The position numbers were made by a program, and so were the translations under genes. A DNA stretch of 63,982 nucleotides, the filler included, from Reticulomyxa filosa (taxonomy: Eukaryota > Protista > Foraminifera), in the NCBI GenBank assembly GCA_000512085.1. It is 17 parts of 17 records of this genome, joined end to end, with 100 filler letters (N's around TTAATTAATTAA, not from the genome) between each part and the next. Parts side by side here need not be neighbours in the genome. Positions count along the whole stretch, not along the records: positions 8,978 to 16,656 come from ASPP01025809.1; 16 more parts are not named here. One strand, given 5' to 3'. Each line of letters starts with the position of its first letter. The stretch's first letter is position 1. The notes under the pieces are model-generated. The model searched no databases. It worked only from the letters and a program-made list of their open reading frames with translations, and was not told the DNA's origin. Of the stretch, positions 4,869 to 39,050 are shown piece by piece.

Positions 4869-5509
4869 ATGAAGATTACTTTTCTCAACAGAGAAGGAGC
4901 CATTGATCTTTTCGTGGTGGTGGCGGTTGCAAGACTAGGGGTGGTCGCCCCCATACTGTGTTACAAACTGTACAACTTTCGAAAGTACCAAAGATTGGAA
5001 TTTATTCACCGAAGAAGGCCTTTATTGACAACTGTACTGGCTGTTTGTACCATTATTGAAATTGGTAAAGATATTTCTTTTTTCCATCCACCCCCCCCCC
5101 CCAAATCAAAAAATGAATAAGGTCAATCGTGTACGTATCACCAAAAAAAAAAAAAAAAAAAGTATTGCTTCCGATATGCCGTTACGGGGCAATATTTGGC
5201 GAAGGACTTGAGCGCACAGTTTATAACTGGCTTACATTATTAATTTTAGTGCACGAGACATTACTGATTCCCCGTTTTTGGTTTTTGTTTTTCGACTGGC
5301 AGGTAGGGAAGGACTTGAGCAAATTGGAATGGAAGCAGTATCTGTATTTGGGCCAATTGCAAGTTCAAGAAGCGACGGGATGCAATACAGCTAAAAGTGA
5401 GATGTCGACGTCCGAGTTGGCACAAATGGCCAATAGCAATGTCGACGTCAATGAAAATAACAATGACAATAACAATGACAATGACAATGACAATGACAAT
5501 GACAATGAC
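4869..5509 (+). CDS. 5' part of a 7TM-like membrane protein (exons about 4869-5064 and 5163-5509), truncated by contig end
   Basis: TM1 (LFVVVAVARLGVVAPILCY), IHRRRPLL loop, TM2, GT..AG intron with poly-C/poly-A, TM3 ending LLIPRFWFLFFDW, then an N/D repeat; same layout as the 162-456 gene. Confidence 0.6.
5450..5509 (+). repeat. (AATGAC)n hexamer repeat encoding an Asn-Asp tract
   Basis: Direct tandem repeat running into the contig end. Confidence 0.9.
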
Positions 5510-5609
5510 NNNNNNNNNNNNNNNNNNNNNNNNNNNNNNNNNNNNNNNNNNNNTTAATTAATTAANNNNNNNNNNNNNNNNNNNNNNNNNNNNNNNNNNN
5601 NNNNNNNNN
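5510..5609. other. Artificial contig linker N44-TTAATTAATTAA-N44, first of 16. Others: 7618-7717, 8878-8977, 16657-16756, 21284-21383, 22630-22729, 24371-24470, 32705-32804, 35457-35556, 41228-41327, 43803-43902, 46530-46629, 48232-48331, 60166-60265, 61304-61403, 62693-62792
   Basis: Identical 100-nt spacer whose core gives stop codons in all six frames; genes and base composition break abruptly at each one. Confidence 0.99.
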
Positions 5610-6819
5610 CAATCTTTGCGGATCATTGTTGGCGTGGCAGCCAGAGACTTGTGCGAGCATATGTTAATGCTAAGTTTTTTTCAATTTTTTCCAGTTATCA
5701 CCGCAAGACATTTCTACGAACTTTTCATTCTTTTATTGGCACATTCTATTGGAAGGTAGTGAAGTCTGAAAACACGAAGTCCTCTCTCGCGGGCGTGAAG
5801 GGCCAGTACATAAACATACTAAGCAATCTGGTGATAAACTTTTTTTTAAAAAAAGCAAATCCAGTGTGATAATGTTTCGATATTCTCTTTCTATTCATCT
5901 TCTTCATCATAATACTATTCTTAGTTGCCAATGTATTGACGGAGTTTCGCACAACTCCTCCACCAAGTTGATCCACTCCATATGGAATGTTCTACAAATG
6001 TAACAATTTTCTCGATTGACGTGAGTGTGCATTCACTAACAACTTCGACGTTTTTTTCTTCACCAACTTCCACTTCTTATCTGCCGCCATTGCCACCACC
6101 TTTTCTACTTTGCACGTATCAAAATTCTTTCTTCTTAAATAGCTTTCTTTCGTCGACTGGCTGCACCAAGGCCCATCTTTCCGGGGTCGATCTGTGAAAA
6201 TCTTGTTTGACTGTTCTACGAGACAGGCTGGACTTAGTATTTAAAAAAAGAAGTATACCTTGTGATGATAGACACACTTTGCGCGGGCATTTCCAGTATG
6301 AAGTTCTATTCTTTTTTTTTCATCTTGGGTATATTCGTTGCGAATGATCCCTACAATCAGACTATGCACCAACCAAAATCCAAGTTGCGAATATGCGTAC
6401 GCACATAATCAGTTTCGATACGATCATTTATCGCCATTTTTATAACAACTGAGCTTCCCTTGTTTGCTGGAACATTTAAATCGCAGTCGAGCTATCTTTG
6501 AAGTAATTGTTGACTTGGCACAGTACCAGACATTTGTTTGCACTTGTGTTGATTATCGAGTTCTTTCCACTTGTTCCGGTTACTTCTAGACATTTCCACA
6601 CTATTTATTAATTTGATATCACATTGAATGTTCTCACAATTGCCTGATTAAGTAACTGTCGAACGGACTAGACTATTCCATACACCCAACGTTTGGATTG
6701 TCAATCTAAGTATTGAGTAAAATTTTTTTTTCATTCTTGGGCATCGTCGTTCAAGATTTCACCTGCCATAATAATAATAAAATCTAGAGTTGCGCATATG
6801 CGCACGTACACGATGCGAT

Positions 6820-8977: not shown

Positions 8978-9344
8978 AATATTATCTGGATCTGCAGATA
9001 AAAGTGTTCGTTTGTGGGATATTCGGTCTGGTCAACAAATTCAAATGTTCAATGGACATGAAAGTGTTGTGTATGCTGTTGAATATTCACAATTTTTAAT
9101 AAAGAATAATATTGGCAATTCAAATGTGATATGTTCTGGATCAAGTGATAATACAATTCGTTTTTGGGATATTCGATCAGATAAGAATGAATTATTTATG
9201 ATTAAAGGAGATGAGAAAAAAGATAATGGAATAGTGTGTCTTAAATTTATTGTATTGAAAAATAAAGATAAGACAAAGAATGTTACATATGATTTGAATT
9301 TGTGTTATGGCTCAAATAATGGTCTCATTCGTATTTGGGGATAA
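8978..9344 (+). CDS. WD40 repeat protein, C-terminal fragment (expanded family ending ..LCYGS..G.IRIWG*)
   Basis: ILSGSADKSVRLWDIRSGQQIQMFNGH..ICSGSSDNTIRFWDIR. Confidence 0.9.
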
Positions 9345-9910
9345 TTTACTTTTTGTTAAATAAGAAATGAAAGTGTTTTTGTTTGAAAGTTTGATTAAAA
9401 GAAAAGTAAGACGATATTGAGCTTGTTTGATTTGATTGAATGCAAGCATGAAAGATGTGTTCTATTTCACTTTGTTGTTTAAAAAATTGAAAATGCTACG
9501 TTTAAGTATTTTAAAGAATTCAAAACATAATTAATGAAAATTGTATTCAAATAGCAAAATAGATTGCAACATCAAATTAATTTTCAATATCTTGTATCGT
9601 TTGTCTTAGACATGAAGCATTGAACAAGAAGCTAATTCGGAATTTGTACTTATTTTCTCATTAGACAATTTTGTGAACATACATATTAAGCCGCATTAGA
9701 TGAATAAAATCAAAATTCTTAAAACAGAAAAAAGTTAAAGGGACAGAATAGTACATTATTGAAGGCAATATTTTCTCCTAAATTAAGATATAAACGATCA
9801 ATAATTCAAAAAATGAAATCAAATAGAGATCCTTCGATATCTCAGCGATAGTTCTTTCTCCAACGCAGCAACTGTTAAAAGATGTTCAGAATCGAAGTTC
9901 ACTAATTCAT

Positions 9911-10270
9911 TAGAATGCAAAATAAAGCTGACACCTAAAATGGCACCTTATATATGTTATTGATTTTTTTCATTCAGACCTAATTTTTTGAAAAAATCTA
10001 CGCATCGAATACGTTCTGAAACTTCTTTAAAAAAAGTTGACAAATTTCATTGTTACGATACAGTCACGATTGAAACTTTTTCTCAAAAATTTTGAAAAAT
10101 CAATAAAATATTCAAATATTTGAAACAATTATGAAAGATTTAATAAAAACTAAATTCAAAATCATATTAAAAACTACACAATTTGCTTATATTTTTCTTT
10201 AAATAAAAAAAAATTACGTATGAATGTTGTTTTTTCATACTTCCTTAAGGTCGTTATAACACATTCAAAA
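9911..10270. mobile_element. Degenerate MITE-like element bounded by inverted copies of the TACAGTAG TIR family
   Basis: 9911-10010 matches the reverse complement of 18975-19112 and 62815-62956; 10150-10260 matches the same sequence in the opposite orientation. Confidence 0.5.
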
Positions 10271-11057
10271 CTTTAACTATGTGCAACATCAAGATTTTTT
10301 CACATTATGTAATTCTTTTAATTGAATAATTTTATATGCAAATAATTCATCTATTTCGAGACTTCAAAAGAAATTTTTGTTCTGTTTTTTTTCTTCTATT
10401 TTTCAATTTTTGTGGATTATATCTTCTTCGCACTTGTTTAACCAATCTTTACGTAGCTCAAATCGATCAACAATAATACTCAAATTGTTCCTACCATACT
10501 TCGAGCTATATAACAAGTAAGCCACATATTTCTAATAGTTCTAAACACAAATCCTCTTGTACGCAATTGATAGCACAGTCACGAACTAATAACTGATTCT
10601 AAATATAACATGATGCTGTTTTCAAGTACAAAAATAAGGTGCTGTATTTGAGCTTGCATTTCTAGCATTAAACTGTCCAAGTCGTGATAGTTCAAACAAT
10701 AATCCTTTATTTCATTGAATTTAGCAGCACCAATATTTATCCTGGTGAAAATTACTGTTTTTCAAAAATTTTGAATTTTGTTCGTTGTTCCATTGTTTTG
10801 CGCTTTGGTACAATAGCCATAAAAGTGAGTATATGTACAGATTTCCAAATGGCATAGAAAGAGTTGAACTTCTGTGTGTTTGAAATGTAAGTCTAATAAT
10901 TCAACAATTGATATTTGATAATTGATAATCCAGACTGTAAACTTTTTTAAAAAATGTACGAGTCAATAAAGACCAAAATCAAAAATCATATTTAAAGACA
11001 ACATGATTTATATATGTTTTAATTGTGCTCTTTCATGAAAAAATCGATATGTCAAAC

Positions 11058-12341
11058 TTATTCCATTCTACTATATTTGATAATGATTTTATTAAAAATC
11101 ATCGATCCATCCTAATTTTATTTTTAAAGTTCGAACCCAATATTGAATAACAAATTTTGTATCATTTTCTGACTGTTGATTATTTGTATACATTAATTTA
11201 TGTCTAATAAAAAAAAAAACATAGATCTAAATTGATAAAAGAAAGATTACCAATTCTGAAACATCCCATATGCGCACTTTTGTCTTCATGTGAGTTGATA
11301 CTATAGTATCTTTATCATTTTGCCCTCCGATAATGTGTATATTAGTGTTGTCTTCACTTAGTATTGCAACACAATCGTACAATGGACTGGGTAAAGTATT
11401 TTCAAATGTTATCCATTTGTTTTCTCGAATTGAATATTTGTGCACTGACTTTGAAACAGCAGAATCCCAATCTTTCCAACCATACGCACCAAAAAACAAA
11501 ATGACATCATTGACATACACATATGCATATTTATAGAATGGAGCAATATCATCACAAACAGATAATTGATGAAATAGAAAAGTGTTGACATTTTCATCAT
11601 ATTTAATTGATAATCCTAGTCCACCACAAAATAACAGCATTTCATTATTTTTTTATTTTTTGCTTCATTCATTTTCACCATTTTTGACTTTGATACAAAG
11701 CAATGAAATGATATGCCATTTCTAGTTGGTAAAGTATCATGTTTAATAAATTGAAATGTATTTAAATCAAACACACTAATATTGTGTGGTCTATAAGTGA
11801 TAAATAGCAAATGATTGTTGCTTCCACCAATCAATGTACGCACTCCATTATAATAATCTCCATTTCTTCCAATGTGAAATGGGTTATTGTTATCGTTTGT
11901 TAAAGGGACCCATTCATTATAATTGCTTAATTTCTCTAATTTCTTTGATTTATTCATTTCGTTGTCATTACTCCAAACGCTTGCATATTTCATTACTAAT
12001 GTATGTCTATATTGATATCCACCAAAAGACAACAAAGTAATTTCATTGTTATCTTTATTGTTGTTATCCATCAGTTTCACTACACAGTGTCCATCTAATA
12101 TTACATCATTTGGATACTCACATATAAACTTATATTCATTTTTGAGTATATGATAAGAATAACAATATCTTTTAAATTCACCTCCACAAATGAGGATTTC
12201 ATGTTTGTGTAGGACACATTGAGATTCTGTAAGTGGAACAGGCAAATCCTTCAAATTTTGAAATGGAGCTGAAGTAGTAATATATTGACTTTGTCCATTT
12301 TGTCTTTTAGAAAGTTTCTGTGCTGTGTTTCGATTAGCCAT
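11058..12341 (-). CDS. Kelch-repeat protein with a C-terminal shared-module exon (11058-11172; intron 11173-11250); two homopolymer frameshifts (pseudogene or sequencing error)
   Basis: LPVPLTESQCVLHKHEILICGG, LLSFGG, VHKYSIRENKW, IHIIGG; frame breaks in the A-run near 11650 and the T-run near 11095. Confidence 0.85.
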
Positions 12342-12937
12342 TAATGTTGCTGTTTTTTTAAAAAAAGGGAGGGTGATACGACTAAAAAAACAAAGTTATT
12401 TTACGTGGCAACAAACTATTCAAACAAAAAAAAAGTTGAATTGATATCTTTTTGTAAGGGAGGCAAAGATGTGAGGTTTACTTGTTACAAGAACTAGTCA
12501 ATAAACTTGGTGCCGAATTGGGGTAATTATAATGATAAAAAAAAGTTCTGTGCTACACTCCAGTTTTTTGCAAGGACGCACGAAAGTAATAACATAAAAG
12601 ATTACAACAAAACAAAAAATCCGTTGCTGTAATATTTAAGAACAATTTTTATAAATCAATAAAAAAAAACTGTACTTGGGAAACGACACAAACATTTTCT
12701 TTTGTCAATTTCACAATCTTTAGAGCCTAAAAATACTGAAAAAATATAAAAGACTAGACAATAAGATTTAAAGGTTATTTTTAAAAATATCATAAAATAG
12801 AATTATCTACTACAAAAAAACAATAACACTGAACAGATACAAGGTCTTCAAAATCAAAGTATTTTGACAATTCCTTTATTGAGTTTGATCAAAAAGTTCA
12901 ACATTTTTTCTCTGTCAGTCTCAAAAGAGTACTAAGA

Positions 12938-13360
12938 ATGACTGACTACTTTTATTGAGGAAAAACAAACTTCAACAAAACATTGGTAAGTTTCAAAACT
13001 GATTGCCTTTAAATCGCTGTTATATGTGATTATTATTGAAACAGTCAGAAGAAATCCAAATTATAATTAGATTCGAATATCTAATATTAAATTAGGATGG
13101 ACTAATGATTTTAACAAGCTCATTGCCAATTACGGATGTTTTTTGTTTTTCATTTATAGCAAATAGAGACTAACTAATAAATTCAATCATTTAATAACCA
13201 TTCAAATACTGTTTATTCTGACTCAAAGGATAAAACTGTTCGTTTGTGGGACATTCGATCATGTAAAAAAACAAGCATTCAATAATCATACTGATTATGT
13301 GAACGCTGTTGAATATATACCATTTGTAGTAAGTAATATTAAAGCTACAAAGATATGTCA
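12938..13360 (+). pseudogene. Internally deleted WD40-family pseudogene with shared-module exon (13045-13135)
   Basis: Short exon ending TL|gtaag, then SEEIQIII..IRISNIKLGWTNDFNKLIANY, then DKTVRLWDIRS..HTDYVNAVEY fragments with stops and frameshifts. Confidence 0.75.
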
Positions 13361-13555
13361 AAAAATATACTTTCTTTATTTTTTTTTCAAGATTTTGTTT
13401 GTTTGGAAATATTATTAAGAAATCAAACATATTGCTGAATGATGTTAAACAACAAACTATTTGTTCAACTTATTTATTTTATCTAAATGAGCTTTTCATT
13501 TGTAAATTGCGGAACCCATTCAAGCTTATTTAATTTCAATTTGTTTGTTTAGGGG

Positions 13556-14671
13556 TCATCCCCATAGCCGAACAGAGCCATCAAAAGAGCATGATACGAT
13601 TGTTGTACCATCTTTTGAAATATCAAGTACTCTTACACCACTAGAATGCCCTTTTAATTCTTGTATCTCATTTCCTATTGTATCCCATAGTCGGATTGTA
13701 TTATCATCGGAGCTAGATACAATTGCTTTGCCATCTGGAAAATATTGTACACTAGTCACTGTTGCTGAATGTCCTTTCAATATTTTTAATCGCTTTCCTG
13801 ATGCCACATCCCATAATTGGATTGTTTCATCAAATGAACCTGATACAATAAATCGATTATCTGGTGAAAATGTTACACTCCTTACTCCATCAGAATGTCC
13901 AATTAATTCTTTTATTCTTTTACCTGTTTTTACATCCCCACAAAGTTATTGTTGTACTTCGAAATGATGATACAATCATTGTACTATCTGGTGAATAATT
14001 TACGCTCAATACACCGCTCCCAGATACTAGTTGTTGGATCTCTTTTCCAGATTTTATATCCCATATACGAATTGTGCCATCATACGATCCTGATATAATA
14101 TTTTTACCATCAGGAGAAAAGTGTACGTCCCATACTGGTTTAGAATGTCCACTAAATTTCATTAGTTCTTTCCCTGTTTTTACATCCCATAATCGAACTG
14201 TTTTATCTTGTGAGCATGAAACAAGTGTATTTCCATCTGCTGAAAATTCTACAACGTTAACTAGTTGTAAATGCCCACTACAAATTTGTATTGGCTGTCC
14301 TGATGCAATATCTAATAACTCAATTTTACCACCAGTTGCTATTGAAGCAACTGTACGACCATCTGGTGAAAATCTTACATTGTTTGTTTGAACTTTTAAA
14401 ATTTTTAACAATTGCAAATATCTGGCCTAATGTCAGATTATTTGTAAACGCGTTAAATTAAAATACAATAAATAAATAAAAAAACGTAACATATTTGAAA
14501 ATAATTTTATCAAAATCACTTATCCACCCAAATTTAATCCTCAAAACTCGAAGACAATTTTGAATTAGCAGTGTTACTTGTTTTTCTGACTGTTTGTTTT
14601 TGGTTATATTTATATTTAACAAAATATGCGAACAAATGGAAGATTACCAACTGCGATACTGCAGTATTCAT
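13556..14671 (-). CDS. WD40 repeat protein (about 7 repeats); exons 14648-14671, 14491-14589, 13556-14426; one +1 frameshift in GGGG near 13938
   Basis: Canonical GH..V..V.FSPDG..IVS.S.D.TIRLWD repeats; GT-AG introns of 58 and 64 nt keep the frame; removing one G joins ORFs 13920-14417 and 13556-13807. Confidence 0.9.
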
Positions 14672-15619
14672 TTCTGCGATAATGCTTTTTTTTTTTATTG
14701 AACTTATAAAACCTATTTTTAGGTACGTCAAAGACTCGTTTTTAACTATTAAAGCTATTGAAATTCTACCCCTTTATACAAAAAAAAGTATGACAAGCGA
14801 AGCGTTTTTCTTCTATCTTTTACCCAAATAACTAGAATGTTGCAATTATACAATATATAATAGCAAAAAGAAATTCTTGCAAAAGAAATAATCGTAATAA
14901 AATCTACAATAATATTAAACTTGCTTGTTCATTTCTTGTTATCTTTCAACATAACATTTAACGATATAAAAAAGTTCAATAAGTTAATGTAAACATGTGT
15001 TATTTTAAAAGGCATTGAGTGTATTATATTGATCATAAAATAATTTTAAAATTATTTTCCACTAGTTTTTTATAATAGGAGAGCGTATGCGAGAAGCGTA
15101 CATTGGAAGTAATTTTTGTACGCTTAATATCTGTAAATGTTATTTTTTGTTGATCAAAAATCAAGTAAATATGATCGGAAAAAAAGGGTGTTGATTTAAT
15201 TTATGCATCCATTGGATAATTTTGTTAATGAGGAGGCATAAGGATTAGAGCATTGATTTTTTTTTTGAAAAAAAGAAAAGGGGTAAGAAAATTCTGGGAG
15301 ACTAAGAGATAAATCGAAAAAGGGGCGGAAAAAAGTTATATATTACAAAGTGTTGTCCAATTATATTAAATGAGAGAGCAAAAAAAAAGACTTGATTTGA
15401 AGTCTTCCATTGTTTACTTAAAACAAGCAAACAAATATTAACAAATACTTATAAAAAAAAAAAAAAAAAGAGTAGTTTATGCAAATGCAATTACATTAGT
15501 TATGATGTCTTAGATCCAAATTTCGCAGAAAAAGTAGGAACAAACGTATTGCTATTTATGTCATAACATACAAACGGTTATACATTTGGCTTTTTTTTTT
15601 TTTTTTTTGTTAAGTCAAC

Positions 15620-16547
15620 GTAACTCTAAAGTCTTAAGGCGTTGCTCAGTAGCAAGAATTCTTTCGTGCAAGCCGTCCAAATCTTGTCTTATTTCATCAT
15701 ATTTGGCAAAAGCTGTTTCTGTTTCTCGAACTTTTGCAACAAGTTGGTTCTGTTTGTTTGTTTGTTTGTTTGTTTGTGTTTTTTTTTTTTTTAAAAAAAA
15801 AAAAGAATGAGGATGTGTTGTTTTGGAGCACATAAAAGAAAAGGAGGGGGAAAAGAGTGGCTCCAACTTGTAGCTCGTCCAATGGGGAATGAAGACTATC
15901 ACAATGGAATTTTCCTAAACGGGGTACGATTTCATTGACTAATTTTTGAAGTGGCTCCAAATATTTTTCCTCAAAGTTGCTGAGGTAGATGATAGGAAGT
16001 GGAGCCTCTTCACCGGTCAATTTCAGAATGTCACGAATTTTGTTGGAAAATTCTTTGCCATATTCGGATGCTTTTTTGGCCTTTGGTCCCTCGACTCTGG
16101 TCATAACAATGACCATGTGTTTCCAAACGTTGCGACCCAACATAGCCTCCAAATTTTTGAGCATGCTTTGATAGGCGTCACTGACACGAACATCTTGATA
16201 ATTCTTCACGAGCACAACAGCATGAATATATTCAATTCCTTTCAAATAAGACACCAAGTTTGTGGCATGTTCACGGTCTCTTCCAGTGGAGTCCGACTCT
16301 CCGGGTTGGTCGGTCAGACTCACCGGATACTTGTATATGCCTTTGCGAATGAACACCTTTTTAATCTCCTGGGTTTTCGACTCCACACTGTCGCTAGGGA
16401 CAAACGGACCTTCGAGCCCCTCTTCCGAGTTGTCACCCGCTATGCGGTTGCCCAGCAGAGACTTGCCCTCGCCTGTTGGACTGTACAGCACAATGCGCAA
16501 GGTGTCCGGATCACTAACTTCCGGTTCAAATTTTAATAATTTGCTTG
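15620..16547 (-). CDS. AIG1/GIMAP-type (TRAFAC) GTPase domain plus coiled coil, partial; exons about 15868-16547 and 15620-15749
   Basis: LRIVLYSPTGEGKSLLGNRIAG (G1), S.T (G2), LTDQPGESDS (G3), IHAVVLV, GRNVWKHMVIVMTR (G4 region). Confidence 0.8.
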
Positions 16548-16756
16548 CTGTATACATATATGTACATATATATATATATATATGTACATATATATATATA
16601 TATATATGTACATGTATATGCATGTACGTATGTTACTTTTTATTTTTTTTTTTTTTNNNNNNNNNNNNNNNNNNNNNNNNNNNNNNNNNNNNNNNNNNNN
16701 TTAATTAATTAANNNNNNNNNNNNNNNNNNNNNNNNNNNNNNNNNNNNNNNNNNNN

Positions 16757-32804: not shown

Positions 32805-33969
32805 TCAATCCATCCTAATTTTATCTTTAAAGTTTGAATCCAATATTGAATAATATATTTTATTTCATTTTTTGACTGTTCATTGTTTATTATTTGTCAT
32901 ACAATAGAATTTATTTTTGTATGATCAAATAAATAAACAAATCATTACCAACTGTGAAGGATCCCATGCACGTACTTTAGTCTTCATGTGAGTTGATACT
33001 GTTGTCCTTATATCACATCTTCCTCCAATAATATGTATATAATTATCTTCTTCATTCGATATTGCAACACAATCTATCAATGGACTAGGTAAAGTGTTTT
33101 GAAATGTTATCCATTTGTTTTCTCGAATTGAATATTTGTGCACTAATTTTGAAATAACATTATCATTACGACATCCCCAAAAAATAAAATAGCGCCATTG
33201 ATACTTACACATGCATAGCGAAATAATTTTGCAATATCATTATAAGCAGGAGTCGCTGAAATTGAAAAGTGTTTTATCTTCATCATATCAATTGATAATC
33301 CTGTATTCTGGTTAAACAACAGCATTTGATACTTTTGTTTATTTTTTTCTTGATTTTTTTCATCATTTCTTGTCCTTGTCCATTTTCTGAATTTGATACA
33401 AAGCAATGAAATTGAATATAATTCCTAGTTGGTAAAGTATCATGTTTAATAAATTGAAATATATTTAAATTAAACACACTAATATAATTGATAAAATAAG
33501 TGATAAATAACAAATTACTATTGCTTCCACCAACCACTGCACGCATCCCCCAATAATTGTCATTATCTCTTCCAATGATAATTGGATGATTGTGATTGTC
33601 TGTGAAAGGAACCCATTGATTGTAATTGTTGAATTCATTTGATTTATTTGATATATTATTCCAAACACTAACATATTTCATCACAAATGTATGTCTTTTT
33701 GTATATTTACTTCCACCAAAAGACAGTAAAGTGATTTGATTGCTGTCTTTGTTGTTGTCTATAAGTTTCACTACACAGTGCGCTTCTAATTGAACATTAC
33801 TTGGATACTTACAGATAAACTTGTATTTATTTTTGGTTGTATGATAAGAATAACAAGCTTTTTGACCAAAACCTCCACAAATGATTAGTTCGTGTTTGTG
33901 TAGCACACATTGAGATTCACCAAGTGGAGTGGGTAATTCCTTCAAGGTTTGAAAGGTTTGATTGATCAT
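32805..33969 (-). pseudogene. Kelch-repeat gene with frameshifts and C-terminal shared-module exon (32805-32875; intron 32876-32948)
   Basis: Close paralog of 11058-12341; frame breaks near 33370, 33280 and 33185; exon SKNEIKYIIQYWIQTLKIKLGWI cut by the contig end. Confidence 0.85.
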
Positions 33970-34364: not shown

Positions 34365-35456
34365 ATGATAACTCTTAGCAATGAGAAGCGAATTTCAACA
34401 CAATTAGCGTTGGTAAGCTTTATTACAAGCTTTCAGAAAGTTTTTTTTTATTGTTTATTTATTGTATGTAATTTGTGACTTAAACAGTCTGAAGAAGAAA
34501 AGATTCAAGTAATTGTACAACACTGGATTCGAATATTAAAAATAAAATTAGGATGGATTTATGAGTTTGACAAATTTGTTTCAATTATGTTAGTTCATTT
34601 GTCCTTTCTTTTTTTTTTTAATATCAATCAAAATATTCAAATATTTATTTAACATAGGTATCTACTGTCCTCATGTTTGAAACATTTCGCTCATCATCCA
34701 AATTAATCAATACATTAACTGGACATACAAACGCTGTGTTTAGTATTGATTATTCAATATTTGATGATTGTCAACTTATTTGCTCTGGGTCAGATGATCG
34801 AACAGTTCGTGTATGGGATGTTGATAACAACAAGCAAATTCAATCATTCAATGGGCATTCAAATTTTGTGAATTTTGTGAAATTTTCATCATATCATTAT
34901 CATAGCCGTCGTCAAAATGTCATTTGCTCTTCATCAGATGACAATACCATTCGATTTTGGGATTTCAAACACAATAAGCAATTACAAATACTCAATGGAC
35001 ACAAATCAGGTATTTACGGCATTGAATTTTCACCATTTAATAGTGGTAGATATTTGTGTTTTGGATCATACAAAACAATTTGTCTATTGGATGTTGAAAC
35101 ATCAAAATCATTACATGTTTTCAATGGACATGAAAAAGCTGTTTGGTGTATTGATATTTCACCATTACAAAGCAATGACGGCGATAATAATAAAATGAAT
35201 AATATTGGTGTGATTGGTGGAAATGGATATACAATTTGTTCTGGATCAGCTGATAAAACCATTCAAATATGGGATATTGAAACAAAAAAACAATTCAGTG
35301 TATTTAAAGGACATGAAGATTGTGTGATTAGTGTAAAATATGGATCAAATGAGTTACTAAATACAATATTATCTGGATCAAATGATAAAAGTGTTCGTTT
35401 GTGGGATATTCGATCTGGTGAACAAATTCAAGTGTTCATAGGACACACTCATTGGG
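34365..35456 (+). CDS. WD40 repeat protein, 3'-truncated; exons 34365-34412, 34488-34588 (shared module, 1 nt short), 34658-35456
   Basis: GHTNAVFSIDY..ICSGSDDRTVRVWD repeats; GT-AG introns; same family as 8978-9344. Confidence 0.9.
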
Positions 35457-38289: not shown

Positions 38290-39050
38290 GGATGAACTTA
38301 AGCTTATCCACGAAAGTTGCGGTCAAGTTTTTTTCTTTCAGAAGCCAAGTTTTTATTATTTATTTTTGCTTGTCTTTTTGAAACAGTCGAAGAAGAAAGA
38401 TCCAAATAATTGTTCATAATTGGATATATTAAACATTAAATTAGATGTATTAAAAATTTTAACAAACTCATCGTCAATTATGTTAGTTCATTTATTTTTT
38501 TCATCAGTGCAAATAAAAAATATTTAAATATTTATTTAACATAGGTTACTGTTTTCATGCTTAATTCGTTTCGTTCATCATCCAAATTACTTAAAATGTT
38601 CATTGGGTATAGTAATTGTGTGAATAGTATTGACTATTTAACACTTGATGGCGACCAATTCATTTGTTTGAATCAGATAATAATACAGTCAGCGTATGGA
38701 ATTTTGATAGCAACAAATAAATTCAATCATTCAATATCATTAACATAATAATTATCAAAATATCATTTGTTCTTCACCAGATGATAACATCAATCGTTTT
38801 TGGGATTTCAAACAAATCAACAATTACAAATATTCAATGGACACATTTATTGTGTTTGTGGTATTAAATAGTAGATATTTGTATTCTGGATTATCGGATA
38901 ATACAATTCGATTTTTGGATGACAGAGCAAATAAGAAGGAACCACATGTGATTAATGAAGATAATAACAAAGAAAGAATAACATAGCTTAAATGTGTATT
39001 ATTGAAAAAGAAAGGAAAGAACAATGGAAAATAATCATTTTTCAAATCAA
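38290..39050 (+). pseudogene. Degraded WD40-family pseudogene with shared-module exon (38387-38481)
   Basis: Same intron positions and FRSSSKLLK..G.SNCVNSIDY start as the 34365 gene; many indels. Confidence 0.8.

What the first reader, a model, noticed from the sequence alone, without database searches (positions are those of the whole stretch)
14491..14589. A 33-aa module on its own exon is shared by Kelch (C-terminus) and WD40 (N-terminus) genes: candidate lineage-specific adaptor system
Seen: six copies of one motif. SENDTKFVIQYWVRTLKIKLGWIDDF (11058-11172, -, Kelch end); SEEIQIII..IRISNIKLGWTNDFNKLIANY (13045-13135, +); SEKQVTLLIQNCLRVLRIKFGWISDFDKIIFKY (14491-14589, -); SKNEIKYIIQYWIQTLKIKLGWI (32805-32875, -, Kelch end); SEEEKIQVIVQHWIRILKIKLGWIYEFDKF..NY (34488-34588, +); and a decayed copy (38387-38481, +). 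All six begin right after an ..aacag acceptor, and five are preceded by a TTG|gtaa phase-0 donor. The clean copy is exactly 99 nt and phase 0-0, so it is shuffle-compatible. It is attached to two different WD40 subfamilies and to an unrelated propeller fold, at opposite ends. Established: F-box, SOCS/BC-box, BTB and LisH motifs are short helical modules joined to WD40 or Kelch propellers that dock them onto ubiquitin ligases or dimerise them, and such families expand and decay rapidly. Inference: this is a foraminiferal equivalent, a constant docking helix pair with a variable substrate-binding propeller, possibly serving defence or protein turnover. I do not recognise it as a named domain.
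Basis: partly seen in the sequence, partly recalled or inferred. Interest (0 to 1): 0.85.

Follow-up and report, generated by a model that had tools for sequence, protein, structure and literature searches.

The report
Foraminiferal helical module shared by propellers
A 33-residue two-helix peptide on its own 99-base exon is attached to about 200 WD40 and Kelch propeller genes of the foraminifer Reticulomyxa filosa; it is real and matches no named domain, but its function is untested.

Summary
The clean copy (14491-14589, minus) is a 99-nt, phase 0-0 exon between an 8-codon first exon and a WD40 propeller. Two damaged copies lie in the same piece: one ends a Kelch gene (11058-11172) and one starts a WD40 pseudogene (13045-13133).

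A profile of the three copies found 156 representative proteins among 1.84 billion. Of 20 checked, 19 are Reticulomyxa filosa and one is noise. In about 200 gene models the module sits just before a WD40 propeller, just after a Kelch propeller, or between the two (10 models).

AlphaFold2 predicts a helix-loop-helix outside the propeller in both contexts. W12, R14, G21, W22, I23, F26 and Y33 are nearly invariant. It has no Pfam or PDB sequence match, and the LisH, F-box and BC-box signatures are absent.

Module sequences group by host family, so a few shuffling or fusion events were followed by large family expansion. An intronless paralogue joins Kelch and module exactly at the predicted splice site.

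The most likely role is a lineage-specific docking or oligomerisation hairpin. A ubiquitin-ligase role is an untested analogy. There is no RNA evidence, and the dimer test gave no verdict.

The parts
14648..14671 (-). First exon of the module-WD40 gene (MNTAVSQL), ending in TTG|gtaatc
   Evidence: Read directly from the sequence. First exons ending in ..SQL recur in paralogues.
14590..14647 (-). Intron 1 (58 nt, gtaatc...aaacag)
   Evidence: It cannot be aligned with the introns of the other copies except at the splice sites.
14491..14589 (-). Clean module exon, 99 nt, phase 0-0, 33 aa
   Evidence: 72 bits against the module profile.
14427..14490 (-). Intron 2 (64 nt, gttacg...ttag)
13556..14426 (-). 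WD40 propeller coding region. The frame shifts by one base in a GGGG run near 13920-13942.
   Evidence: Pfam WD40 E=5e-35 and 3.4e-39 for the two pieces; frames.
11227..12341 (-). Kelch-type propeller gene as two overlapping ORFs (12341-11616 and 11640-11227). They are separated by a one-base shift in an A run. The gene ends in ..DVSEL|gtaatc at 11251.
   Evidence: There are at least 328 R. filosa paralogues. A paralogue folds as a 6-bladed Kelch propeller, Z 28.5.
11173..11250 (-). Intron between the Kelch exon and the module exon (78 nt, gtaatc...caacag)
11058..11172 (-). Kelch-terminal module. It comprises 26 codons, one extra T in a run of five T (11098-11094), then NKIIIKY and the tail SRME*. 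There is no GT donor after ..KY (AG instead).
   Evidence: The same tail type, S[RI][IM]K*, occurs in paralogues.
12938..12985 (+). Decayed first exon of a module-WD40 pseudogene (MTDYFY*..., ends TTG|gtaagt)
   Evidence: It resembles the MTTLSNEKQTSAQL first exon of paralogues.
13045..13133 (+). Decayed module exon (89 nt; about 10 nt lost including QHW; donor GT changed to GG)
   Evidence: 40.5 bits over profile positions 11-33.
13210..13340 (+). Short frameshifted WD40 remnant downstream of the decayed module
   Evidence..DKTVRLWDIRS.. and ..HTDYVNAVEY.. in two frames.

Best explanation
The element is a Reticulomyxa-specific protein module of about 33-36 residues (consensus ..SQL|SKEEIKxIIQHWIRILKIKLGWIDDFDKIVVKY). 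It is encoded by a symmetric 99-nt phase 0-0 exon and folds as a helix-loop-helix hairpin outside the adjoining beta-propeller.

Shown:
- It occurs in about 200 gene models.
- It always lies directly N-terminal of a 7-bladed WD40 propeller, directly C-terminal of a 6-bladed Kelch propeller (followed by a stop within 3-5 codons), or between the two.
- Seven positions are nearly invariant.
- Its sequences group by host family.

Inferred:
- It reached the two families through one or a few exon-shuffling or gene fusion/fission events among interleaved Kelch and WD40 genes, and was then amplified with them.
- Seventeen of the 33 consensus residues are hydrophobic, too many for an isolated hairpin, and R14, K19, D25, D27 and K28 are conserved. 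It therefore most likely buries a surface against another protein. That could be self or hetero association (Kelch-M with M-WD40) or docking to a common partner, so that variable propellers share one constant handle.
For: Exon anatomy:
- The window copy is described.
- The same 99-nt exon with ag| and |gtta(a/c)g boundaries occurs in five further assembly loci.

Abundance and position:
- The profile found 156 representative hits.
- 44 of 120 Kelch paralogues carry the module at the C-terminus.
- Architecture counts are 53 Kelch-M-end, 97 M-WD40, 10 Kelch-M-WD40 and 2 WD40-M-WD40.
- In L001 the Kelch exon, the module and the WD40 exon are linked by phase-0 introns with intact sites.

Conservation:
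- Conservation starts and stops at the exon borders.
- W12 is kept in 178/184 copies, R14 in 167, G21 in 178, W22 in 182, I23 in 173, F26 in 172 and Y33 in 169.

Structure:
- AF2 predicts a helix-loop-helix in both contexts, with propeller pLDDT above 90 and module pLDDT 56-76.
- Solved WD40 and Kelch propellers align only to residues 46-333 and 25-351 of the models, which excludes the module.

Selection:
- Deep pairs have dS around 1 and dN/dS 0.16-0.4, while flanking introns cannot be aligned.

Splicing (indirect):
- The intronless paralogue L005 5360-6472 joins Kelch and module exactly at the L|S junction.

History:
- The module tree needs 7 label changes against 45 when labels are shuffled.
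Against: - There is no direct evidence of binding. The homodimer prediction gave no verdict.
- The module's pLDDT is only moderate, so its packing is unknown.
- No RNA run was available.
- Recent Kelch-linked copies show dN/dS of 0.6-1.5 over 33 codons, and about a quarter to a third of the DNA copies examined are damaged. Many copies may therefore be drifting.
- All evidence comes from one draft assembly, in which homopolymer frameshifts are frequent.
Confidence: 0.6

Rival explanations
1. The module is a ubiquitin-ligase docking box, functionally like the F-box, SOCS/BC-box or DCAF helix-loop-helix, that hands WD40 and Kelch substrate receptors to a cullin-RING core.
For: - A short helical element next to a substrate-binding propeller is the layout of known receptors.
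- The best structural matches of the Kelch paralogue include the CRL2 receptors KLHDC10, KLHDC3 and KLHDC2 (Z 25-27.6).
- The EloB/C-bound KLHDC10 and KLHDC2 chains are, with MKLN1 (8ttq), the few rows whose aligned range runs into the first module helix, to residues 373-374. Their rmsd is 4.6-5.1 A.
- A helix-loop-helix directly before a 7-bladed WD40 is the DDB2/CSA arrangement (established knowledge, not tested here).
Against: - The BC-box, Cul-box and F-box LPxE patterns occur in 0 of 131 copies.
- There are no significant Pfam F-box, SOCS or BTB hits: single weak FBA_2 and BTB-like matches in 131 scans at E>0.03.
- There is no PDB sequence match.
- No R. filosa Skp1, EloC or DDB1 was available to test.
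Confidence: 0.17
2. The module is a passive inter-propeller linker. The ancestor was a Kelch-linker-WD40 gene, fission left the linker on both halves, and it has no role of its own.
For: - Ten Kelch-M-WD40 models exist, and L001 has an intact three-part gene.
- Their module sequences look intermediate between the Kelch and WD40 types.
- The module groups by context, so few events are needed.
Against: - A mere linker would not keep seven nearly invariant aromatic, glycine and charged positions across about 190 copies.
- It would not show dN/dS of 0.2-0.4 at saturating dS.
- It would not be retained at the free end of more than 50 Kelch proteins with a conserved short tail.
Confidence: 0.15
3. 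The module is an integral propeller element, either a velcro strand or a cap.
For: It abuts the first WD40 strand (..KY|xKxFxLLKxLxGH) and the last Kelch strand directly.
Against: - It is predicted helical in both contexts.
- Complete solved propellers align without it.
- The same sequence would have to serve two unrelated propeller folds at opposite ends.
Confidence: 0.04
4. The similarity is not protein-level. It reflects recent DNA repeats, a transposon-borne exon, or a gene-prediction artefact.
For: The genome is highly repetitive, and many GenBank models around the module are poor, with read-through into introns and junk upstream extensions.
Against: - Similarity stops at the exon borders.
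- Introns differ in length (38-78 nt) and in sequence.
- Synonymous sites are near saturation between types.
- The open frame and splice sites are kept in diverged copies.
Confidence: 0.04

Closest known systems
LisH motif (PF08513) of LIS1/PAC1-type WD40 proteins
   Same: It is about 33 residues long, forms two helices, and sits N-terminal of a 7-bladed WD40 propeller. LIS1 homologues are among the nearest named relatives of these WD40 domains (35-37% identity; PDB 7mt1 Z 38.5). In LIS1 the LisH motif dimerises the protein (established knowledge).
   Different: There is no sequence relationship: hhalign probability is 0.9% against LisH regions of nine LIS1 homologues. The LisH core pattern occurs in 0/131 copies. 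LisH is not known at the C-terminus of Kelch propellers. Dimerisation of the module was not shown.
C-terminal BC-box/Cul2-box helices of the KLHDC2/KLHDC3/KLHDC10 Kelch receptors
   Same: A 6-bladed Kelch propeller is followed directly by short C-terminal helices. The KLHDC10 and KLHDC2 EloB/C complexes (9d8p, 8ebn) are among the best fold matches, and their aligned range extends into module helix 1.
   Different: The BC-box pattern [STP]Lxxx[CSA]xxx[AILV] and the Cul-box LPxP occur in 0/131 copies. Propeller sequence identity is 14-19%. Binding to Elongin C was not tested.
Helix-loop-helix / H-box of DCAF receptors (DDB2, CSA) that binds DDB1
   Same: A helix-loop-helix lies immediately N-terminal of a 7-bladed WD40 substrate receptor (from established knowledge of the DDB1-DDB2 and DDB1-CSA structures).
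   Different: The H-box has almost no sequence signature, so membership cannot be tested by sequence. DDB1 binding was not tested. The module also occurs C-terminal of Kelch, which DCAF motifs do not.
F-box (PF00646) of FBXW and Kelch-type F-box proteins
   Same: It is a short helical module coupled to WD40 or Kelch propellers in large, fast-evolving families.
   Different: The F-box has about 45 residues and three helices, and is N-terminal in both propeller classes. The LPxE signature occurs in 0/131 copies and there is no Pfam hit.

Membership tests
LisH (PF08513) | Sequence profile similarity to LisH | tested here: not met
   hhalign of the 131-copy module alignment against LisH regions of nine LIS1 homologues gave probability 0.9% over 8 columns. 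There is no Pfam LisH hit at E<=10 in 131 scans.
LisH (PF08513) | Core pattern [ILV]xx[YF]LxxxG[YFLM] | tested here: not met
   0 of 131 copies. The W12-to-G21 spacing is 9 residues, not 5.
LisH (PF08513) | Forms a homodimeric four-helix bundle | tested here: inconclusive
   Complex prediction with two copies scored 0.01 and returned 'no answer'.
F-box (PF00646) | Pfam profile match, LPxE start, about 45 aa in three helices | tested here: not met
   No F-box hit. LP.[ED][ILV] occurs in 0/131 copies. Two helices over 33-36 aa are predicted.
SOCS box / BC-box + Cul-box | [STP]Lxxx[CSA]xxx[AILV] followed by LPxP | tested here: not met
   Both patterns occur in 0/131 copies. There is no Pfam SOCS_box hit.
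SOCS box / BC-box + Cul-box | Binds Elongin B/C | not testable with these tools
DCAF H-box / helix-loop-helix | Helix-loop-helix directly N-terminal of a 7-bladed WD40 | tested here: met
   The AF2 model of P0136 has H11-30, a loop, H37-48, then the propeller from residue 49. This is arrangement only.
DCAF H-box / helix-loop-helix | Inserts into the DDB1 BPA-BPC cleft | not testable with these tools
   No DDB1 sequence from this organism was available.
BTB/POZ | Alpha/beta domain of about 95 aa with a Pfam BTB profile match | tested here: not met
   The module has 33 aa and two helices. There was one weak BTB-POZ_ANK-like match (E 0.13) among 131 scans.
WD40 propeller (host domain) | Seven WD repeats forming a closed propeller | tested here: met
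   Pfam WD40 E 5e-35 and 3.4e-39 in the window. The P0136 model has Z 39.8, rmsd 1.6 A over 276 residues against 5yzv.
Kelch propeller (host domain) | Six-bladed Kelch fold | tested here: met
   Pfam hits in the window are weak (PF24681 E 2.4e-5, below the cut-off). The P0021 model has Z 28.5, rmsd 2.1 A over 261 residues against NS1-BP Kelch 5yy8.

The most novel reading that the evidence does not exclude
The hairpin is a pairing handle. Kelch-M and M-WD40 proteins would associate through it, and the Kelch-M-WD40 fusions would be the 'Rosetta stone' for that pairing. This would give a combinatorial set of two-propeller receptors. The receptors would be encoded in clusters beside NACHT, metacaspase and AIG1-GTPase genes and would serve self/non-self recognition or defence in a giant multinucleate foraminifer.
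Probability: 0.1. Interest if true: 0.8.

Novelty: new variant of a known kind. Interest (0 to 1): 0.5.

Why it matters
If the hairpin is a constant docking or pairing handle on hundreds of variable propellers, it would be an independently evolved counterpart of the F-box, SOCS-box, LisH and H-box systems, in a supergroup (Rhizaria) where almost no protein machinery has been studied. It is also a clean protist example of a symmetric phase 0-0 exon shared by two unrelated domain families, with fused, split and intron-lost forms all preserved in one genome. In practice the profile would improve R. filosa annotation, because many GenBank models read into the flanking introns or omit the exon.

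Tried and rejected
- RNA evidence: the look-up of sequencing runs listed no run for 13540-14700, so read laying could not be used.
- Complex prediction on two copies of the module scored 0.01 and returned 'no answer'. It counts neither for nor against dimerisation.
- The ESM Atlas search by features gave no usable hit. By structure it returned only generic helical hairpins and foraminiferal WD40 clusters.
- A PDB sequence search with the 131-copy profile gave one chance hit at E 0.65.
- Pfam on single copies and on all 131 copies gave nothing significant.
- A metagenome contig scan with the module pattern gave 34 pattern matches, none confirmed by tblastn.
- Pfam on the long upstream extensions of 'unknown-M-WD40' models gave nothing, or only weak TPR and NACHT hits. 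These extensions look like translated non-coding sequence in front of the true first exon.
- Proteins named 'zinc finger' or 'RING' in GenBank have no RING domain by Pfam.
- Literature: no held paper mentions Kelch together with Reticulomyxa. The R. filosa genome paper is not held.

Full report
**Source and layout of the piece**

The piece comes from Reticulomyxa filosa. The window's Kelch ORF has at least 328 paralogues, and all of the listed ones are named R. filosa. The loci fetched later all belong to assembly GCA_000512085.1.

Within 8978-16656 I find the following features:
- a WD40 3' end on the plus strand (8978-9344), cut by the piece's edge;
- a Kelch-type gene on the minus strand (12341-11227) followed by a module exon (11172-11058);
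- a decayed module-WD40 pseudogene on the plus strand (12938-13340);
- a module-WD40 gene on the minus strand (14671-13556);
- an AIG1-type GTPase gene on the minus strand (about 16623-15615).

**Checking the observation**

Its gene structure can be read directly from the sequence:
- the first exon, ATG AAT ACT GCA GTA TCG CAG TTG (14671-14648);
- an intron starting gtaatc and ending aaacag (58 nt);
- the 99-nt module exon (14589-14491);
- an intron starting gttacg and ending ttag (64 nt);
- the exon GCC AGA TAT TTG..., which runs in frame into WD repeats.

Both introns are phase 0.

The Kelch-linked copy has the same acceptor and the same upstream TTG|gtaatc donor. It reads 26 module codons and then shifts frame at a run of five T. 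In the new frame it continues NKIIIKYSRME and stops. After ..KY it has AG where the WD40-linked copies have a GT donor, so it is a terminal exon.

The third copy has lost about 10 nt, including W12. Its first exon carries a stop and its donor is GG.

DNA similarity among the three copies is confined to the exon and the splice sites.

All three frameshifts in the piece lie in homopolymer runs. I cannot tell assembly error from real decay.

**How common the module is and where it sits**

A profile of the three window copies (A1) was searched against 1.84 billion representative proteins. It gave 156 hits at E<=1e-3. Twenty were looked up: 19 are R. filosa proteins, and one is an unnamed ENA fragment with four tiny partial matches that I regard as noise. 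A pattern scan of JGI metagenome contigs found no relative.

Independently, 44 of the 120 best Kelch paralogues carry the module within a few residues of their C-terminus.

| Architecture | Models |
|---|---|
| Kelch-module-end | 53 |
| Short first exon-module-WD40 | 42 |
| Long upstream extension-module-WD40 | 55 |
| Kelch-module-WD40 | 10 |
| WD40-module-WD40 | 2 |
| Fragments | the rest |

No model has the module after a WD40 propeller's C-terminal end alone, or before a Kelch propeller.

The 'long upstream extensions' are mostly low-complexity read-through in front of a recognisable first exon such as MTTLSNEKQTSAQL, and they have no Pfam domain. One partial model, P0195, has a weak NACHT match before the module.

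Both WD40 subtypes seen in the window occur with the module: the RFSPDG.. type and the SIDYS..FICSGS type.

**Limits of the module**

In a stack of 184 ungapped copies, information content rises at position 2 and falls after Y33, which matches the exon borders. Counts of the nearly invariant residues are:

| Position | Copies of 184 |
|---|---|
| W12 | 178 |
| R14 | 167 |
| G21 | 178 |
| W22 | 182 |
| I23 | 173 |
| F26 | 172 |
| Y33 | 169 |

The last residues of the upstream exon are often SQL in both contexts.

**Exon structure in other loci**

I scanned the six-frame translations of five further contigs and found nine more copies:
- Six are clean 99-nt exons preceded by ag. A seventh, L005 6362, has an open 99-nt frame but no intron before it; it is the intron-loss case described below.
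- WD40-linked copies are followed by gttaag, gttgag or gttacg.
- Kelch-terminal copies are followed by AGTAGA, AGTATA or AATATA and a stop within 3-5 codons (SITK*, SRIK*, SKF*, NIMK*; the window copy has SRME*).
- The L004 copy is heavily decayed.

In L001 the Kelch exon ends ..DPSQL|gtaata. The module exon has a caatag| acceptor and a |gttaag donor, and a WD40 exon follows aaaaag|. All junctions are phase 0, so a genuine three-part gene is possible.

Several GenBank models miss the exon. P0038 reads into the intron and stops 38 nt before the module exon, and the L002 Kelch model does the same. The share of Kelch genes with the module is therefore higher than 44/120.

**Indirect evidence that the splice is used**

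No RNA run could be listed. However, in L005 the single-exon gene 5360-6472 encodes ..HIWDISL|SVLIKFFIQYWIRTLNVKLGWIDYFDKIIFKYSKF*. Here Kelch and module are joined exactly at the L|S junction. Its neighbour on the same contig keeps a 68-nt intron there. Precise intron loss is what reverse transcription of a spliced message produces. This argues that the junction is real, but it remains an inference.

**Structure**

I modelled P0136 (module-WD40) with AlphaFold2 on a 70-row alignment:
- helix 11-30, loop 31-36 (..KLGW) and helix 37-48;
- pLDDT of 56-75 for the module;
- a seven-bladed propeller with pLDDT above 90.

I modelled P0021 (Kelch-module) on 119 rows:
- a six-bladed propeller;
- then helix 358-371, a loop, and helix 379-391, with pLDDT 59-76.

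Solved WD40 propellers align from residue 45-50 onward (Z up to 39.8). Solved Kelch propellers align to residues 25-351 (Z up to 28.5). The module is therefore an appendage, not a blade strand.

Seventeen of the 33 consensus residues are hydrophobic. That is more than a free two-helix hairpin can bury, and this is my main reason for expecting a partner surface.

**Comparison with known modules**

- Pfam finds nothing for single copies or for 131 copies scanned one by one.
- The PDB sequence search gives one chance hit.
- hhalign against LisH regions taken from LIS1 homologues found here gives 0.9% probability.
- The BC-box, Cul-box, F-box LPxE, LisH core and IQ patterns each occur in 0 of 131 copies.

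The closest resemblances are architectural:
- LisH-WD40 in LIS1.
- Helix-loop-helix-WD40 in DCAF receptors.
- Kelch plus C-terminal helices in KLHDC2/3/10. In the last case the EloB/C-bound structures are among the few whose alignment to the P0021 model runs into the first module helix, at rmsd 4.6-5.1 A. This is a lead, not a test.

**History and selection**

A maximum-likelihood tree of 128 modules (33 columns, poorly resolved) needs 7 changes of context label against a shuffled mean of 45. The WD40-linked label needs 2 changes and the Kelch-linked label needs 5. The module therefore moved rarely and was then copied with its host genes. The six fusion-gene modules are scattered in the tree and look intermediate in consensus.

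I calculated Nei-Gojobori estimates on eight intact DNA copies:
- Pairs across types, with dS about 0.6-2, give dN/dS of 0.16-0.5.
- Closely related Kelch-linked pairs, with dS 0.13-0.27, give dN/dS of 0.6-1.5.

Long-term constraint is supported. Recent copies may be drifting, but 33 codons give noisy values.

Kelch-M and M-WD40 genes are interleaved in the window and in L002, which would favour fusion and exon exchange.

**Function**

The docking or oligomerisation reading rests on composition, conservation and analogy. The one binding test allowed, a homodimer of the module, returned no verdict. A ubiquitin-ligase link is not excluded but has no direct support. The neighbours seen are suggestive of an expanded recognition or defence-type gene set, but this was not examined statistically. 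They are an AIG1 GTPase in the window and a metacaspase and a 1795-aa NACHT-HEAT protein next to a Kelch paralogue in L004.

**Verdict**

The finding is a real, abundant, sequence-novel two-helix module of R. filosa on a symmetric exon. It is shared by two propeller families, and fused, split, intron-lost and decayed forms are all present. It is a new variant of the 'short helical handle on a propeller' theme, and what it binds is unknown.

Noticed in passing
window 15615-16623 (-): An AIG1-family GTPase gene (P-loop ..SPTGEGKSLLGN..; Pfam AIG1 E 6.3e-12 for 15903-16560). It appears to have an intron around 15750-15900 and a coiled-coil-like last exon ending at 15615.
   Followed up: partly
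window 16540-16640 and 15745-15790: Microsatellites: an (ATATATGTAC)-type repeat at the right edge of the piece, and a (GTTT)n run followed by long T/A runs inside the GTPase gene's presumed intron.
   Followed up: no
window 8978-9344 (+): The 3' end of a second WD40 gene, of the SIDYS/FICSGS subtype with a long insert in the last blade. Its start is cut off by the piece's edge, so it cannot be said whether it carries the module.
   Followed up: partly
window 11094-11098, about 11620-11640, about 13920-13942: All three frameshifts in otherwise well-conserved genes lie in homopolymer runs (T5, A7, G4). They may be assembly errors rather than pseudogenisation.
   Followed up: partly
L005 5360-6472 versus L005 7868-9323: Two neighbouring Kelch-module paralogues, one without and one with the intron before the module exon. 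This is a precise intron loss at the L|S junction.
   Followed up: yes
L004 9301-18408: A Kelch paralogue lies directly next to a Peptidase_C14 (metacaspase) gene and a 1795-aa NACHT-HEAT protein. A heavily decayed module copy lies at L004 7362-7460.
   Followed up: no
L003 11132-11268; L002 9961-10162 (-): GenBank gene models for Kelch paralogues (P0038 and the 331-aa model in L002) read into the intron and stop, omitting the module exon that lies 38-103 nt downstream.
   Followed up: yes
P0195 (ETO01264.1, partial, contig end): A weak NACHT-like region (Pfam E 0.004) runs straight into the module (..DPFLLQLIIKHWIRILHIKFGWITDFN). This may be a NACHT-module(-WD40) architecture.
   Followed up: partly
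L001, L002, window introns after the module: The donor after the module exon is consistently GTTAAG, GTTGAG or GTTACG (T at +3), unlike the GTAAT/GTAAG donor before it. Read through in frame, it gives VK* or VE* in several copies.
   Followed up: no
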